From the NCBI RefSeq assembly GCF_001447785.1, contig NW_015161410.1, positions 1,286,366-1,350,365 of the forward strand: a stretch of 64,000 nucleotides of DNA, given 5' to 3'. The notes under the pieces were generated by a model. The model saw only the letters and a program-made list of their open reading frames with translations. It was not told where the DNA came from and ran no database searches. Position 1 is the first letter of the stretch; each line of letters opens with the position of its first letter. Shown here in pieces: positions 1,728 to 52,365 of the stretch. Source of the stretch: Gekko japonicus. Taxonomy: Eukaryota. The translations under genes were made by a program, and so were the position numbers.

Positions 1728-1940
<213 letters not shown>

Positions 1941-6582: not shown

Positions 6583-7455
6583 AAGGCAAGTAGACCTTTG
6601 AATACCAGTTCTAGGAGGCAACATCAAAGGGAGCGGTGGTGCAGGGAGCAAAAGCACCTGCCTTAACATCTAACAAACAGCTTGTAGGCTGTTCGATACC
6701 CACCGCGGCCGGGGTGAGCACCCGGCCCTAGTCCCAGCTCCCGCCCACCCAGCGGTTCGAAAGTGATAACAACTTATGAGTAGATAAATGGGTACCTTCC
6801 TTAGAAGGCAGGGAGCACCCTCCTCCATTGGGAAGTGAGGTGGGAACCTCAGCAGCGACGGTTCGGCGAGCGGTGGCGGCGGCAGCAGCGGAGTGGTGTG
6901 TAATGGCAGTGGTAGTCGAGGCGGTGAGCGGAAGAAAAAAGGAGATGCAACATCTAGCGGTGAACTGGCGGTGAAGGCGGAGCCCGGAAGGCGTGAGGAC
7001 ACTCGGCGCAGGCGCGGCGGAGCCTGAGGGACGGAGCCAGTGCCGCGCCGATGCGATCAGCACGACGAATGGGCCCACCAACTCCAAAAGATCTCCCGAG
7101 GAGCCTGAAGAGAGCGGAGGGAAGATGCCGACCCGAAGCCGAGAAGCCGAGCCGAGACGAGCTGAAGACACATCAACTGAATCCCACCGGGTGCCGTTAG
7201 GTAGTCCCGCCCCTAATACGATATATATATGTGCCCATAGATAGGGATAATACAAACTATGTAAGCCGCTCAGAGACCCATGGGAGGGGTTCGAGCGGGG
7301 TAGAAGTTGAAGGTAAGAAGAAGTAAGGCTTTGACCTCTGTGTTCTATCTGTTGTTGCTCTAGTGGAACTGGTTGGTCACTGTGTGAAATAGGATGCTGG
7401 ACTAGATTGAGCACTGACATGATCCAGTAGGGTTGCTGTGACATTATTACGTTCT
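6583..7455 (+). mobile_element. Old CR1-type 3' end interrupted by the 6629-7328 insertion
   Basis: Left part gaataccagttctaggaggcaacatc and right part ctttgacctctg…ggaactggttggtcactgtgtgaaataggatgctggactagat…gatccagtaggg rejoin as a typical squamate CR1 3'UTR. Confidence 0.6.
6629..7328 (+). mobile_element. Full-length ~700 bp composite SINE-like retroposon (tRNA-like head, Sauria-like core, CpG-rich body, L2-type tail)
   Basis: Head gggagcggtggtgcaggg with B-box-like gttcgatacc. ctagtcccagctcccgcccacccagcggttcgaaag resembles the Sauria SINE at 62.3 kb. Tail tgtaagccgctcagagaccc…gagcggggtagaag resembles the tails of the Squam3-like SINEs. Possible aagg TSD. Confidence 0.72.
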
Positions 7456-16414: not shown

Positions 16415-17863
16415 CGAGTGTATTAAAAGTAACTGAAACTTGATGTGACGAATGCATGGGTAATGGTGGCAAGATCAGTTCTTCTAGGGAAGAATTCAGC
16501 TGCCAGCCATGTTTGGTGAAAGGTAGTTCAGTCCATGGAAGCTACATTGGCATCAAGATAAGGCTGGGTCTAACTGTGAACTGTGAACATGATCTTTACA
16601 GGGAGGGTCATCACTTCCCCCCCCCCCCCTAGTCATGCACACAGGGAGGTATGCAGCACAGGTGCCGCTATTTGTGTTTTAATGCCCCAGGAGGCTGAGC
16701 AATCCAAAAGGGCCTAACAAGAAGACCCACAACATGGTTTCAGTTTTCATGTTATTTGCCTGCCTACTTGACTAACACCATAGCCTCAGTGTAAATTCTA
16801 ACATCTGTATACATAAAAGATGAAGCAAATGTTTTATTCCCCACTTCAGTTTTCAGCTTCTCAGTTTATGTTTCAGACCTATACCAGTAGTTCGCTTAGC
16901 ACCATTACCAAGGTGGTAATATTCCTATGCTAACTAATTGCTTCCCAAGCCTAAATAGTGGGTTTAGTTATTTTCCAAGGATTTCCCCCCAAGCCATGAA
17001 CTCATTGTCAAAGTCTGTTTCAAAAGTTTAATACGAATTGTCGACACTTCACTTTGGAGCCATAATCCCAAATAACACATACAAGACAACATAAGGTGTG
17101 AAAACCACAACCGAATTTTGGAATTTGTGTTTTACTATTAAATTCTTTGACTCCTGAGCTTGATATATGTATTGTATTAAGCAGCTTTAACTGCCAGAGT
17201 ACATGATTTAGCATTCTGAATGAGAAAATATATGATTTACAATCCTCTTTCTGGGTCAAAGTAGAACCACAATATTCTGGATGTTGGATTTTGTGTTCTT
17301 TAGCTGAGAATTAGCCTTTCCCTTCCATTTAGCGGGATTATATAGTTTGCAATTTGCTGTATTTTCTTCAGTCAGATTTAGCACAGTTTACAAAGCTTGG
17401 GTAATGGTTTGGGATGGGATGCATGATGCATGATGAATTAACAGTGTAAAAATGCTAAGTTCCTCAGTGTAAATAATTTGTATTCAGATAGTTCCCTTTT
17501 AAAAGAAGCTGCTGTCATTTTAGTAGGTGGAACGTGTAGCCTTCTTAAGAGCACATTCTCTGAATTTCCTTAGCATTGTCATTTAGTGAAATAAATGGTA
17601 GGTTGGACAAAAGGGAATTTCTCTTCCCAGTGGTGTGGTTTAGATGACGCAGAAAACCATGGCTTAATTATACTGTGACGTTCTCTGGAGGATATGTGAA
17701 TATAGTATATGGTGATGGTTTATGGTTGGGAAGTATGGGAAGGGGAGTGGCTTGAGAGGCTGAGGGAGTGAGGCAAGGAGTATGTTTCACACGCAGGGAA
17801 AAATTGGTTGATGGTTGAGGAGGCCACCAATTCATGTTGTCCTCAGCTACCAAGGTGCCCGGC

Positions 17864-18142
17864 AAGAAGAGAAGAGATTGGATTTATACTCCGTCCTTCA
17901 CTACTCAAAGGAGTCTCAGAGCAGTTTACAATCTCCTTTCCCTTCATCTCCCCACAATGAACACTCTGTGAGGTAGGTGGGGCTGAGAGAGCTCTTTTGA
18001 GAACTGCTTGTGAGAGAACATCTCTGAAAGAACTTGTAACTGACCCATGGTCACACCAGCAACTGCATGTGGAGGAGTGGGAAATTAGGCCCGATTCTCC
18101 CAGATTAGAGTCTGTGCTCCTAACCACACCAAACTGGCTCTC
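17864..18142 (-). mobile_element. tRNA-derived SINE with L2-type tail (Squam3-like)
   Basis: Reverse complement of the SINE at 56929-57213. A/B-box head and (ttc)n tail. Confidence 0.8.
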
Positions 18143-18925
18143 AGTGGCCTGAAAACAAAATCCCTTCTGCCTTTCACACTCTTTCACTAGCCGCCTCCTT
18201 GACCATGTTCTTGACTCCTAGTCTGCTCAGGAAAAACAATATCCAAAGATTTCTGAGGAGGATCTGTTGCCCTTGCAGAGCTACTTACCAATGTTTAAGG
18301 GGGTTAATGATGTTGTGCGGCTTTGTCTATAGTTGGGAATGGTAGGCCAGGATAGCACCCATGCTTCTGCGAGGAAGTTGTTGAATTTGCCAAATCCAAT
18401 TACCATTGAGTGATTATCTGTGAGCAAATAGTGGTTTCACAAATTAGACATAGTGTTAATAAGCCATGGCTTTGCATTATGCCTGAACTGACCCATTAGT
18501 TTGTGAGATTTACTGTGAGTTTGGATAACTGTTTGAACAAGAACTACATTTCACATTGGTGTCTGCTGAAGTAAGTAATTAGAAAAAATCATGGTCTTTC
18601 AATAAAATCATTTCAGTTAGTCTTAGAGATACAACTAGATTATTTTAGTGAGCATTCAAGCAGTAACATTTGCATGTATATATTCTAAAATGGGATAATT
18701 ACATGCAGTGTTTTAATTTATGCTGTAATTGTCCTACATTTGAATCGCCTACAAGAAAAATAAATGTTTTATATCTATTTAGAATTTTACTAAGCTGTCT
18801 TCTGGTTTATTTGTCACATATGTTTTTAAAATATGGCTACTAGAGAGAACGAACCAAAATTCCATCAATTTTACTTAAATTGTGGCATCTGTACACTCTT
18901 CTTAATATAATTCTGCATGTTCATA

Positions 18926-19441
18926 TTTTTTATTTATTTTATTTATCATTCGACTTGATATACCGCCCTAACCCCCGTAGGGGTCTCTGGGCGGTTTACA
19001 ATTCTTGGGTGCTAGTCACCTATATCAACCCTAACTACGGCCACATCAGTTCAAGGGGGGGGGCTGCCTACTGGCACCCTGGTGGAGGCTCGGTGTCGTT
19101 CACTTTTCCCGGCTCGGCTTCTTCTTTCGGCTGTGAAATGTCCCAGTGCTTAGGCCGACAGGCGGATGGATGGATCGCCGGCGACGTTGTCCTCAGCCCG
19201 ACTGTGTCCTTCTGGCTCCGTGCGCCTCCGGATGACATCACTGCGCCTCCATCCTCCGTCGACGACAGCTGCCCTGCTCTTCCGTTGCTGGCCACCAGGG
19301 ATCAGTCCCCTTCTGGCTCTGCTGCCGCCGCTTGCCGCCTTCAGCGTTACACAGCCTCCTCCTCCTCCGATCGTCGTACCCATTTATCTACTCGCCGATA
19401 GGTAGTTACTTGGCTTTCAAACCGCTGGGTGGGCGGGAGTA
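18926..19441 (-). mobile_element. 5'-truncated composite SINE-like retroposon (Sauria-like core, GC-rich body, L2-type tail) fused to the TESC 3'UTR
   Basis: Minus strand reads ctcccgcccacccagcggtttgaaag…gagtagataaatgggtac (shared with 6738-6795), gaagccgagccg…ccaccagggtgccagtaggcagcccc (shared with 7142-7213), and ends tgtaaaccgcccagagaccc…gggcggtatat…(taaa)n. Confidence 0.75.
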
Positions 19442-19571
19442 CCAAGCAACTGCCCTAGATCCCTGCAGCACTGGGAGAAGCCAATCCCCCATCTACCCGT
19501 ATTGACCGCCCAACATTCTGTCCTGGGTCGCTTTCAAAGGCATCGGCACTTCCATTGCAGCTCCTCTTTGG

Positions 19572-20216
19572 TTAGTGGCAAGGCGCAATTGGCTCCATGG
19601 TGAGGAAGCGGACGTGCATCTTGGTCTCGATGTCGATTCCTTCCCACATCTTCAGAAAGTCTTCAAATGTGATTCCCTCGTACACCTGGTCTGGCTCCAT
19701 CTGCCCCATGCAGATGCTGGCAGCCTCCATCATGGCAGCCTCCGCGATGGACCTCACCGACTCCTTATCCAGGTGGGGGTTCCCTGAGAGCAGTTCCTGC
19801 ACCACTTTTCTGTATTCCTGCAGGGTGATCTTCCCATCGCTGTCCGAGTCATACATGTGAAAGAGGAATTTCAGCTTCTGTTTGCGGAAACGATCCAGCT
19901 GCTCTTCATCCATATCCATCTCAATCGGTCTGAAATTAGACATGATAGTCAGGAAGTCCTCAAAATTGATTTCATCCACCAGCCCTTCGGATGCCTCTCG
20001 TAGGTTCCTTTTGTCAAAAAAGGAATGGACGATTTTGGCCCTAAGGGGGTTGAACTCCAGATCAGGGATGCGATCAAAGTTCTCTTTGCGGATGGTTGGC
20101 TGATCCCCACTTAGCTGTCTGAATCTTCGGTGGAGATGCTCGATTTGCTCTGAGGTGAAGCCAGTCTTGTCGGCGAGCTCCTGGATCTCCTCCGACCTGG
20201 AGTGGGACGCCCCCAT
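19572..20216 (-). CDS. TESC: Intronless tescalcin / calcineurin B homologous protein 3 retrocopy with an intact 214-aa ORF (candidate retrogene)
   Basis: ATG at 20216 in strong context (ggcATGg), TAA at 19572-19574, 645 nt with no stops or frameshifts. MGASHS N-myristoylation motif, EF-hand loop [12 protein letters not shown] and C-terminus [12 protein letters not shown]…CH are typical of TESC. Same length as human TESC as I recall it. Vertebrate TESC is multi-exon, whereas this copy is contiguous. Confidence 0.93.
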
Positions 20217-20420
20217 GCCCCCCTCGGCGAGGCTGCTGGATGCAGCTCGGACACAACCCCGGGGTCCGGTCGGTTGGGGCCTGGGTGGTGGAGGGGCGGC
20301 CGGCAGAAGGGCGGGCAGGGCAAGTGGAGGGCAGGAGGGGGCCGTGGCGGGTCCGTCCACATAGGAACCCTGCAGGCTGCTGGCGCGCGGGCGAGAGCGG
20401 CAGAGGCAGAGGAGGACTGT
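20217..20420 (-). promoter_or_regulatory. GC/CpG-rich 5' leader of the TESC retrocopy (probable parental 5'UTR, CpG-island-like)
   Basis: Very GC-rich with many CpGs and GGGGCGG/GGGCGGG GC-boxes. Switches abruptly to AT-rich intron sequence at about 20420. Confidence 0.55.
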
Positions 20421-21071
20421 AGTAAATGAGAGCAGTTGCTCTGAGCCCTAAATGAACAAAGTACCTTGTAAAAAAATACTACTAGTTATCAGATACTTTC
20501 TCTTTTGGAGCAATTGCTGCGGTGAGTGAAAATATAATACTAGGACCAGGATTTCATGTCAAAGATGTTTTCTAAGGTAATATACATAGTTATTTCTTTG
20601 GAACTGAGAAGAAAAAAAATGTAGAAACATAACAGGGTATAGAAAAGAAAGGAAGAGGGGCCTTAAATGGCACTACAGTGACAGGGTCTTTTAAAAAAGG
20701 ATTTGGACTTGAGAGATAACTGATTTTGTGTACTATTATTGCCTCAAAGATTAACCAGGAATCTTTTTACTATTATCTCCAGAATGAGGTTCAAAGAAGA
20801 ATTGTCAGAGAAATTCTCTATTTCTTTTTCATTTTTCACCTTCACTGTTATGTTTTCCTCCAGAGTGTGAACATTGAATGTTATAGAAGCAGTGTAAGAA
20901 TTTTTTTGCCTAGCATTTGATTCAGGAATTTAAGCAGCTACAGAGTTAAATCTAAATTAGATCAAATGATCATGGAAATATTTTGTATCTATTGAATTGT
21001 ATTGCAGGACGCTTCCACTGCAGAGGTCGAAAGGACCTCTCTGTCAGAGAAGAATCAAGTGCTACCAGGAG

Positions 21072-25200: not shown

Positions 25201-28200
25201 ACGTATTGCATTGTGAACAATTTCTGTGTGTTTACAGGATGCTCAACCCCATGCATACTCAGTGATTGAGTTCTTATTTAGTGCAAACTGTAGCTTATAG
25301 CTATTGATTCAACAACAATTAGAAGCTGGATTGCACTGCTGATTTGGAAGGAAAACACAGATTGTTGTTTCTCCAAAATTGAAAGTAACTAGTTATGCAA
25401 GGGAAAAAGGAAGCTCATATGCATATACTGGTCTTGTTCAGGTAGCACCAAAACCAGGTTTGGGTCTTAATATCTGCACACACCCCTTCACTTTCTCATT
25501 ATTAGGAAAGACTAAAATTAGACAAGTCTTTAAGAAGCAAAGTACTGATAAAGAATCTTTCTATTTATTGGGTCACGCTGGACACTCTTGTAGGATGCTG
25601 AATTCTGCAGTAGGACTATTCCAGTAGATTAAANNNNNNNNNNNNNNNNNNNNNNNNNNNNNNNNNNNNNNNNNGACTGGCATAACTTTTCATGACAGAG
25701 GGGGGATTTGATCCTGGGACTCCCCAATTGTAGTCTGACATTTTAACCACTACACAATGCTGGCGGAACACATAAAGGTAAATCCTGACCAATATATCTA
25801 TTAAGTTGTGGGTACAGTGGGTCATGCCTTGTATGCAGCTCAGTAACTCATCTTAATGTGGTGCGCATGTAAATAAAAGTGAAAACTGCAGCCAGTAAAC
25901 AAGGGTCAATGTCTGTAGGTTTCCTTACAGCTGATTTGCATGTTACTTGCAGCCAAGGAGGTATTTTAAGGCCTTATTTATACCGATTTATCATGAGTAG
26001 CCACATTAAGGATGGTCAGGAATTGCTTTTGAGAGAAAAAAGACTGGAGCAAAGGGAATGCTCTACTTTGTGGAAGTTCTATTAAAACAATAACATAAAT
26101 AAATGAAGCTAACATTACACAGCAACTTTGCAGCAGTTCCTTTCATTGCACTAACATTGGAGAAGCTGCTGCTGGATCATGTCCAAAGTCAGTCCTGGGA
26201 GGGTTACTGTTAAGCTCTGATTATATGTTTCATATGCGTAAAATAGTTGGTGTTCCTCATTCCAATACAGAATTCAGAGTCCTTCATGAAGTACCTTAAG
26301 CTGTGCACATTTACCTTTCATATTTATGAGTTTTCTTGTACTATTGTTGAGCTCACACTCACTGTGTTATATGCTTTTAACATCTGGATTTACCTGAGGC
26401 AGTTGTGTTTATGGTTGTGTGTGTGATGGGGGGAGAGAGAGGTTAAACACTCAGGATGTTGTTTTCTGACAAGCTTTTTTTTAAAAATAAAAATTAAAAA
26501 TTCCAGCTTTGAAATGGCCAAAAATTGAAATAAGCAATTGCTTGATTCTTAAACACAATTAAATAAATTATAATCCAACCAGATGTTTTCAGGGTTGTTA
26601 CATGCTGAAAATGGGATCCAGTCTCCGATTATGTACTTCAAGGGCTTCTGTCAGTATTAAGGGATTCACTGATCCTTACTTGTTGCTGTGACAAACAAAA
26701 ATCAGAAAATAAAACTTATTCGTTGGGAATATTTTTTATTTTACCTTTCTCCATCATTGGAGTTACGTCAGGTTGCAATTATGATAAAAAGAATATACAA
26801 TGAAATCCATAAAATTAAAAAAAGAATAATTTAAAATTATATGACAGCATGAAAAACCCTCCTGAATAATTCTTCTTTACGTACCTTGCAGAATCTCTAG
26901 TGATAGTGGATGTCTTATAAAATATTGTCTTAATTTGAATGGTGCTTTTCCTCATGTCCCATGCAGAAATCCCAACACGTGTCCCCACCCCCTCTGTTTA
27001 GTCTGCCCACTCACCTATTTCTAGTCATTCCCCCCCCAAAATCCCTAATGCCCCCAACCTCTCATCATTTATCTTCTCTAGATCAGATCTTCACCCTGTC
27101 ATTCTCCATCTACCTTCCACGATCCCCATTTCCCAAATGAGTCCTGGAGGCTCCATTATGTTGGAAATAGCAATTGAACCATTCTCCTTTCTAATCACAC
27201 ATGTTGATTGTTGATTGCTGAGGGAAGTATACTCTGTACATATAGTGAAACACTCTTCCTCAGGTCATATTTTTTGAACTCTTTGGCATTGTAAAAAAAC
27301 CCTTCCTTGTACTGTTTATGAAAGAGAAGCACCCCCCTTAAGGGAATTAATAGTAAATTATTAATGGATGGTGGGGTTTTTTTTTGCTACCAGTGGGTGT
27401 TAGGAGCTAGTGTGGCAAGGGACAGAGTTTTAAGGAGCACCAATGGTTTAGACAGCTCTGAGCCACTACTCATATAGCACTTCTTGGTGCTGTAGAATAA
27501 ATTTGCTGTAAATGTCATTATAGTTGAGGATTTTGGGTTATTGGAAGTCCAAAACCATAATTCTGCCATGTTTACAATGAGAATAAATTACATAAGACAG
27601 CAAATCTTATTTTATTACAGATCTAATAAATCAACCAGGTTTGTTGTATTGAACTTGTGTCAGTAAAAGTTGTACATTTGTTTAAGAGGGGAGACCCTTG
27701 AGTGGTCACCACGGGTGCTGCTGCCATCATGACTTTCTGAACCTAGCATGGTGCCTTCTCCATCTTGTTTCTTTTTTTCTTCCAGCCATTAACCCCAGTT
27801 TATGGTGCTCCATTCCTTTAAGCCCTTCACCAACATGGAGCTTCTTCATGTTGGGGCCATGCAAACTGAGTATCTGCTATTGTTTCTGCCACTTCCTTGG
27901 CACCAGTTTGTAGCTGGAGGAGGAAAGCTTATGGGTGAATCTTCAAACTACTCAGGAGATGCATGTGGTGGTGGAGCCACATTTAGATAGGCCTGACACA
28001 ATGAAACAAGGAGGAAATGTGACTTATGGGGTGTTGGATAGGAACCAGAAGCTCAGAAAGACAAATCTTCAGAAGACTGAAAACGTTCCCTCTCTGGCTA
28101 TTGGAAGCAGCTTCAGTGGCCTGAATCAGTATTTTCCAAATTTTCAGTCAGTAGACTCAAATTGGTGAGATGTTGTGGCAAAATGAGCAGCAGTGTTTTT

Positions 28201-51996: not shown

Positions 51997-52365
<369 letters not shown>

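What the first reader, a model, noticed from the sequence alone, without database searches (positions are those of the whole stretch)
19572..20420. Intact intronless tescalcin (TESC/CHP3) retrocopy nested antisense in a PARD3 intron
Seen: a complete 214-codon ORF with no lesions, strong Kozak context, the MGxxxS myristoylation signal and the EF-hand loop [12 protein letters not shown] retained, plus a CpG-rich leader in otherwise CpG-poor intron. Known: TESC is a multi-exon EF-hand cofactor of the Na+/H+ exchanger NHE1 and is not normally located in PARD3. Inference: this is a retroposed copy. No TSD or poly(A) is recognisable, and several residues differ from TESC as I remember it (e.g. [26 protein letters not shown]). 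With the frame still intact, this fits a lineage-specific functional retrogene, although a young neutral copy is not excluded.
Basis: partly seen in the sequence, partly recalled or inferred. Interest (0 to 1): 0.8.

Follow-up and report, generated by a model that had tools for sequence, protein, structure and literature searches.

The report
Young intronless tescalcin retrocopy in gecko
A gecko genome carries a recent, still-intact, intron-free copy of the calcium-binding tescalcin gene pasted backwards into an intron of another gene; it is an ordinary young retrocopy whose intact reading frame is explained by its youth, and nothing found here shows that it is a working gene.

Summary
An uninterrupted 214-codon ORF (ATG 20216, stop 19572-19574, minus strand) encodes tescalcin/CHP3. 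It is 98% identical to Gekko japonicus CHP3. It has the MGxxxS signal, one canonical EF-hand loop and a CpG-rich leader. It runs without a break across at least six exon junctions that annotated isoforms reveal in squamate, turtle and tuatara TESC, so it is a processed retrocopy. It lies antisense in a 50-kb intron between two conserved plus-strand exons, which I recognise from memory as PARD3; no tool named them.

Only four differ (Q64H, A65S, D159E, G160A), all private to this copy. Two of them hit positions invariant in 117-119 other tetrapod TESC.

There is no poly(A) and no target-site duplication. The insert ends in a 5'-truncated SINE-like element with a LINE-type hairpin and an (ATAAA)n tail, which suggests a chimeric mRNA-SINE retroposition.

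High CpG retention and the few changes indicate a young copy. At that divergence an intact ORF is expected by chance about 40-55% of the time.

The scan also noted this stretch as s1-830838. Verdict: young retrocopy, function unproven and rather unlikely.

The parts
19572..20216 (-). Intact intronless TESC/CHP3 coding sequence: 214 codons plus TAA
   Evidence: Searches give the ORF. One search gives the EF-hand Pfam hits. One search gives CHP1 and CHP2 as the best solved relatives. One search gives 98% identity to Gekko japonicus CHP3 and 84-94% to other squamate CHP3. One search shows it is colinear across six isoform-defined exon junctions.
20217..20425 (-). GC- and CpG-rich leader, presumed to be the copied 5'UTR of the source mRNA. 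The 5' boundary is approximate.
   Evidence: GC 0.73, CpG o/e 0.67. One search shows a sharp fall to 35% GC upstream of about 20430. One search shows an out-of-frame upstream ATG at 20362.
19441..19571 (-). Short segment after the stop codon, presumed to derive from the TESC 3'UTR
   Evidence: no similarity to the head of the SINE-like element. GC 0.56. That it comes from the TESC 3'UTR is an inference.
18926..19440 (-). 5'-truncated CpG-rich SINE-like composite retroposon fused to the TESC part. It ends in a hairpin (about 18960-19005) and an (ATAAA)n-type tail (18926-18945).
   Evidence: One search gives a 64-bp BLAST hit, and an alignment along its whole length, to the element at 6629-7328. 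One search gives the tail hairpin at -28.2 kcal/mol, z -4.5. One search gives CpG o/e 0.86.
1755..1935 (+). Upstream host exon with AG/GT borders, recalled as PARD3
   Evidence: The name is from memory and is not confirmed by any tool.
52040..52218 (+). Downstream host exon with AG/GT borders, recalled as PARD3. The intron between the two exons is 50,104 bp and holds the retrocopy.
   Evidence: One search found 25 exon-sized relatives at 55-88% identity from many assemblies, all unnamed, so it is a conserved coding exon.

Best explanation
This is a young processed retrocopy of the gecko's own tescalcin (TESC/CHP3) mRNA. It is inserted on the minus strand of a 50-kb intron of a plus-strand host gene, PARD3 by recall. 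The source mRNA encoded a protein identical to today's Gekko japonicus CHP3. Since insertion the copy has gained four amino-acid changes in two tight nucleotide clusters.

The insert has neither poly(A) nor a target-site duplication. It ends in a 5'-truncated SINE-like element with a LINE-recognition hairpin and a microsatellite tail. The most likely mechanism (inferred) is that a non-L1 LINE reverse transcriptase started on the SINE RNA tail and switched template onto the TESC mRNA 3'UTR, then copied it to its 5' end.

The frame is intact because the copy is young, not because selection has been shown. It brought no promoter beyond its own 5'UTR, and it lies antisense to the host, so host transcription cannot express it. 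Most likely it is a neutrally evolving retrocopy.
For: Identity.

Intronless state: annotated isoforms of Paroedura, Anolis, Hemicordylus, Pogona, Sphenodon, Carettochelys and Salvator place exon junctions at aa 20|21, 41|42, 68|69, 94|95, 175|176 and 191|192. The window ORF crosses all of them.

Youth:
- Its distance to each of Heteronotia, Eublepharis and Paroedura is that of G. japonicus CHP3 plus 4; to Euleptes, which shares H64, plus 2. G. japonicus CHP3 has no private residue.
- CpG o/e is 0.58-0.86 in the insert against 0.16-0.23 around it.

No sign of TESC-type constraint:
- A65S and G160A hit positions invariant in 117 and 119 other TESC proteins.
- Only 3 of 120 sequences carry 2 or more such private changes.
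- 27% of positions are invariant, so 2 hits out of 4 is what random placement gives (p about 0.29).

The intact ORF is uninformative: its simulated survival is 0.42-0.56 at 4-6 substitutions.

Chimeric 3' end. Chimeric retrocopies made by template switching are documented (PMC2104539, PMC4476161). SINEs that borrow LINE 3' ends are documented in squamates (PMC13295347).

Base rate: only 88-280 retrocopies per mammalian species are selectively preserved (PMC4772013, abstract).
Against: No nucleotide sequence of the parent gene could be obtained, so the number of synonymous changes, dN/dS and the true age are unknown. All four replacements are chemically conservative, so the protein could still work. 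The leader keeps CpG o/e 0.67, which could also mean a germline-unmethylated, active promoter. Transcriptome-sized contig sets from at least 5 studies hold about a third of the sampled words; they may come from the parent or from this copy. The template-switch model is not distinguished from a SINE already present in the parent's 3'UTR, or from a later SINE insertion.
Confidence: 0.72

Rival explanations
1. It is a functional, lineage-specific TESC retrogene. The copy is transcribed from its CpG-rich leader or a nearby proto-promoter and makes a myristoylated EF-hand protein that adds to or modifies tescalcin function.
For: The ORF is complete, with a strong start context and all motifs retained. 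The four changes are conservative. CpG is retained in the leader. Many transcriptome-sized runs hold roughly a CDS worth of near-identical words.
Against: An intact ORF is expected by chance at this divergence. Two replacements fall on sites that never change in other TESC. No promoter was copied, and the copy is antisense to its host. The RNA word share (0.28-0.35) is about the CDS alone, not the 0.75 expected for a transcript running from the leader to the first AATAAA in the SINE tail. The prior for selective preservation of a retrocopy is low (PMC4772013).
Confidence: 0.14
2. It is an orphan retrogene. The intron-containing TESC was lost in Gekko, this intronless locus is the only TESC, and the annotated G. 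japonicus CHP3 is its orthologue.
For: TESC-like RNA is abundant in runs of organism A.
Against: A sole functional copy would not be expected to change two universally invariant residues while its G. japonicus counterpart changed none. Another gecko, Paroedura, clearly has a multi-exon gene with an alternative first exon. The RNA word share does not include the leader or the SINE part.
Confidence: 0.04
3. It is a retrocopy made by the ordinary route from a parent mRNA whose 3'UTR already contains the SINE-like element (the mRNA ends at an AATAAA in the SINE tail), or a later independent SINE insertion into the retrocopy. In either case no template switch occurred. This rival concerns the mechanism only, not the status of the copy.
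For: The tail contains AATAAA motifs followed by a short A-run. SINEs in 3'UTRs are common.
Against: There is no poly(A) between or after the modules, and no TESC-like sequence follows the SINE tail. The SINE part starts without the about 110-bp head that the related element has. RNA-type runs hold far fewer words than a TESC mRNA carrying this SINE would give. Earlier notes of this scan describe other cellular-RNA-to-SINE chimeras in this genome; these are leads only.
Confidence: 0.25
4. It is an assembly artefact, with cDNA or a misjoined contig placed in the intron.
For: The genome-sized DNA contig sets hold only 0.47-0.56 of the sampled words.
Against: The TESC part is fused to a genomic-type repeat and to intron sequence on both sides, with no N runs nearby; the nearest is at 25634. 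DNA runs hold more words than RNA runs, so non-CDS parts are present in independent DNA data.
Confidence: 0.02

Closest known systems
Tescalcin / calcineurin B homologous protein 3 (TESC, CHP3), e.g. Gekko japonicus CHP3 (P0002)
   Same: 214 aa and 98% identical. The same MGxxxS N-terminus, the same single canonical EF-hand loop and the same C-terminus.
   Different: It has no introns and lies in another gene's intron. It carries Q64H, A65S, D159E and G160A. S65 and A160 are seen in none of the other 117-119 sequences that cover those positions.
Processed pseudogenes and retrogenes made by L1 in mammals (Carelli et al. 2016, PMC4772013; review PMC5470649)
   Same: A spliced mRNA copy with no promoter carried along, inserted at an unrelated locus. 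A young copy with an intact ORF.
   Different: It has no poly(A) tail and no target-site duplication. Its 3' end is a SINE-like module with a hairpin and an (ATAAA)n tail, which points to a non-L1 LINE machinery.
Chimeric retrocopies formed by reverse-transcriptase template switching (U6-L1 chimeras, PMC4476161; bipartite and tripartite chimeras, PMC2104539)
   Same: Two unrelated RNA-derived modules are joined head to tail in one orientation. The 3' module is a retroelement and is 5'-truncated at the junction.
   Different: The 3' module here is a SINE-like element with a stringent-type LINE tail, not L1. The 5' module is a complete coding mRNA. No flanking duplication ties the two together.
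Sauria SINEs mobilised through LINE-derived 3' ends (PMC13295347)
   Same: A SINE-type element whose 3' end is a LINE-like recognition module followed by a short tandem repeat.
   Different: The tail repeat here is (ATAAA)n-like, not the (ACCTTT)n reported for the anole. The body is an unusual CpG-rich sequence shared with the element at 6629-7328. The partner LINE was not identified here.

Membership tests
Tescalcin/CHP3 (CHP family of EF-hand proteins) | Full-length, high identity to annotated CHP3 orthologues, closer than to CHP1 or CHP2 | tested here: met
   98% identity to G. japonicus CHP3 and 84-94% to other squamate CHP3 over 100% of the length. CHP1 and CHP2 match only at E 2e-26 and 1.8e-15.
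Tescalcin/CHP3 (CHP family of EF-hand proteins) | N-terminal myristoylation motif MGxxxS and a canonical Ca2+-binding EF-hand loop | tested here: met
   MGASHS is present. [12 protein letters not shown] lies within a Pfam EF-hand_1 hit at aa 115-141, E 1.5e-08.
Tescalcin/CHP3 (CHP family of EF-hand proteins) | Binds Ca2+ and the NHE1 tail | not testable with these tools
   This needs biochemistry.
Processed (mRNA-derived) retrocopy | Lacks all introns of the parent gene | tested here: met
   Isoform gaps define six exon junctions in reptile TESC. The window ORF is continuous across all of them.
Processed (mRNA-derived) retrocopy | Sits at a locus unrelated to the parent | tested here: met
   It lies antisense between two spliced plus-strand exons of another conserved gene. 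The gene name PARD3 is from recall only.
Processed (mRNA-derived) retrocopy | Poly(A) tail at the 3' end | tested here: not met
   the insert ends in a SINE-like module with an (ATAAA)n tail, and no poly(A) follows the TESC part.
Processed (mRNA-derived) retrocopy | Target-site duplication flanking the insert | tested here: not met
   the best shared word is an AT-only 8-mer, which is chance level.
Processed (mRNA-derived) retrocopy | An intron-containing parent is present in the same genome | not testable with these tools
No note of a parent exists in the scan.
Functional retrogene | Transcribed from the copy itself | tested here: inconclusive
Functional retrogene | Purifying selection (dN/dS below 1, replacements avoid constrained sites) | tested here: not met
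   dN/dS is not computable. The replacement pattern was tested: 2 of 4 replacements fall on sites invariant in the other 117-119 TESC.
Functional retrogene | ORF intact for longer than chance allows | tested here: not met
   P(intact) is 0.42-0.56 at 4-6 substitutions.
Functional retrogene | Conserved at the same locus in sister species | not testable with these tools
Chimeric retrocopy by RT template switching | Two unrelated RNA-derived modules fused in the same orientation, with the 3' module a 5'-truncated retroelement bearing its RT-recognition tail | tested here: met
   similarity to the 6629-7328 element starts at about 19440, without its about 110-bp head; hairpin with z -4.5 plus a repeat tail.
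Chimeric retrocopy by RT template switching | The junction is absent from the parent transcript, and one duplication flanks the whole insert | tested here: inconclusive
   No duplication was found. The parent 3'UTR is not available.

The most novel reading that the evidence does not exclude
This is a newborn gecko-specific tescalcin retrogene, created through a SINE-tail-primed (non-L1) chimeric retroposition rather than by L1. It is transcribed from its own CpG-rich leader and encodes a TESC variant altered at two residues (A65S, G160A) that are otherwise invariant across tetrapods. It may still be polymorphic in the population, since DNA runs hold only about half of the locus words.
Probability: 0.1. 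Interest if true: 0.55.

Novelty: new member of a known kind. Interest (0 to 1): 0.27.

Why it matters
On present evidence this is one more young retrocopy, which is ordinary. It has two modest points of interest.

1. It is a clean, full-length coding mRNA joined to a SINE-type tail with neither poly(A) nor a target-site duplication. It therefore documents how genomes dominated by non-L1 LINEs can still make gene retrocopies.
2. It is young enough (4 replacements, CpG not yet decayed) to serve as a time-zero example of retrocopy fate, if expression and population frequency can be measured.

No paper in the searched library links tescalcin to a retrogene.

Tried and rejected
For the same reason I did not look up the cluster of P0001. 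Only local scripts touched the CDS.
- Naming the host gene with a tool: the Atlas gave nothing on either exon. The word search on the 60-aa exon gave 25 unnamed fragments. A peptide search in papers gave none. The two host exons were searched singly, and the joined model was not searched.
- Looking for the parent in the scan's notes: none.
- TSD search: nothing above chance.
- Rejected: that IMSNFRP and [11 protein letters not shown] mark divergence. They are standard squamate TESC residues.
- Rejected: that the intact ORF is itself evidence of selection.
- Not attempted: a structure prediction. The tool returns no coordinates from which to judge burial of residues 65, 159 and 160.

Full report
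**Observation.** On the minus strand an ORF runs from the ATG at 20216 to the TAA at 19574-19572. It has 214 codons and no stop or frameshift.
- The start context is GGGGGCATGG.
- The N-terminus is MGASHS.
- The loop [12 protein letters not shown] (aa 123-134) lies within a Pfam EF-hand_1 hit.
- The best solved relatives are CHP1 and CHP2.
- The about 209 bases upstream (20217-20425) are 73% GC with CpG o/e 0.67. The 2-kb flanks have o/e 0.16-0.22 and the whole window 0.23.

**Identity.** The word search returns annotated calcineurin B homologous protein 3 (tescalcin) from many vertebrates. Gekko japonicus CHP3 (P0002) is 98% identical over the full length. Other geckos are 90-94% identical, and other squamates 84-89%.

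Only four positions differ from G. japonicus: Q64H, A65S, D159E and G160A.

**Intronless state.** The annotated isoforms in the hit list still expose exon borders:
- Alternative first exons in Paroedura, Anolis and Hemicordylus place a junction at aa 20|21.
- A skipped 27-aa block in Pogona and Sphenodon gives 41|42 and 68|69.
- A skipped 26-aa block in Carettochelys gives 68|69 and 94|95.
- A skipped block in Salvator and a read-through in Pogona give 175|176 and 191|192.

The window ORF is continuous over all six junctions. It is therefore an mRNA-derived copy.

**Genomic setting.** Two plus-strand exons with AG/GT borders lie at 1755-1935 and 52040-52218. I recognise their translations as PARD3, but this is recall and not a tool result. 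The Atlas gave nothing. The word search found 25 exon-sized relatives at 55-88% identity, all unnamed. A peptide search in papers found nothing. The exons were searched singly, and the joined model was not searched. The intron is 50,104 bp, and the copy lies antisense about 17-18.5 kb into it.

**The 3' end.** After the stop codon there are about 130 bases of presumed 3'UTR. From about 19440 down to 18926 the sequence aligns along its whole length with the CpG-rich composite SINE-like element at 6629-7328, but it lacks that element's about 110-bp head.

It ends in a hairpin (-28.2 kcal/mol, z -4.5) followed by an (ATAAA)n-type tail. This is the layout of a LINE-recognised SINE 3' end; PMC13295347 describes the principle in squamates. 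There is no poly(A) between or after the modules, and no target-site duplication.

The simplest model is a chimeric retroposition: reverse transcription primed on the SINE tail, followed by a template switch to the TESC mRNA. Such chimeras are known (PMC2104539, PMC4476161). Earlier notes of this scan list other cellular-RNA-to-SINE chimeras in this genome (leads only). A SINE already resident in the parent's 3'UTR, or a later insertion, is not excluded.

**Age.**
- Its distance to Heteronotia, Eublepharis and Paroedura is that of G. japonicus CHP3 plus four; to Euleptes, which shares H64, plus two. G. japonicus CHP3 has no private residue. The source mRNA therefore encoded the G. japonicus-type protein, and all four changes arose on the copy.
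- In the copy the affected codons are CAT-TCC and GAG-GCT. With the likely ancestral codons (inferred, not seen) these are two tight clusters, which suggests two mutational events.
- CpG o/e of 0.58-0.86 across the whole 1.5-kb insert, against about 0.2 around it, also indicates little decay.

**Selection.**
- Of the 214 positions, 57 (27%) are invariant in the other 119 proteins. A65 and G160 are among them.
- Two hits out of four is what random placement gives (p about 0.29).
- It is very unlikely under TESC-type constraint, because none of the at least several hundred replacements among the other sequences touches these sites.
- Only 3 of 120 sequences carry two or more such private changes.
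- With four non-synonymous nucleotide changes, neutrality predicts about six substitutions in total. Simulated survival of the intact frame is then 0.42-0.56, so intactness is uninformative.

**Expression.** In one search, transcriptome-sized contig sets from at least five studies of the same coded organism hold 0.28-0.35 of the sampled words of 18700-20700. That is about the share of the CDS (0.32), and well below the 0.75 expected for a transcript spanning the leader, CDS and SINE tail. Two genome-sized DNA sets hold only 0.47-0.56.

These numbers fit parent-derived mRNA. They might even fit an insertion polymorphism. They are not diagnostic.

Nothing could be laid, and from then on I worked beside those places.

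**Verdict.** This is a young, probably neutral, chimeric TESC retrocopy. Its functional status is untested and on balance unlikely. No paper in the library links tescalcin to a retrogene.

Noticed in passing
window 6629-7328 (+) and 18926-19440 (-): Two copies of a CpG-rich composite SINE-like retroposon, with CpG o/e 0.88 and 0.86 against 0.23 for the window. They are about 71% alike. The high CpG content suggests a recently active family.
   Followed up: partly
window 20111-20362 (-): An out-of-frame upstream ATG at 20362 opens an 83-codon uORF that overlaps the main TESC start codon. It would dampen translation of any transcript that starts upstream of it.
   Followed up: no
window 1755-1935 (+) and 52040-52218 (+): Two conserved host exons with canonical splice sites, recalled as PARD3. 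The second has 25 unnamed exon-sized relatives in short contigs from many assemblies.
   Followed up: partly
window ~17860-18160 (-): An ordinary squamate SINE copy whose tail (TGTAAAC...GAGAC... hairpin) is of the same type as the tail that ends the TESC insert.
   Followed up: no
proteins P0096 (Elephantulus 'CHP3-like') and P0086 (Numida): Besides the window copy, these are the only sequences among the 120 with two or more private changes at otherwise invariant TESC positions. The elephant-shrew 'CHP3-like' protein may be another TESC retrocopy.
   Followed up: no
window 18700-20700: Genome-sized DNA contig sets of the same coded organism hold only about half of the sampled words of the locus. 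This is compatible with patchy contigs or with an insertion polymorphism, and remains unresolved.
   Followed up: no
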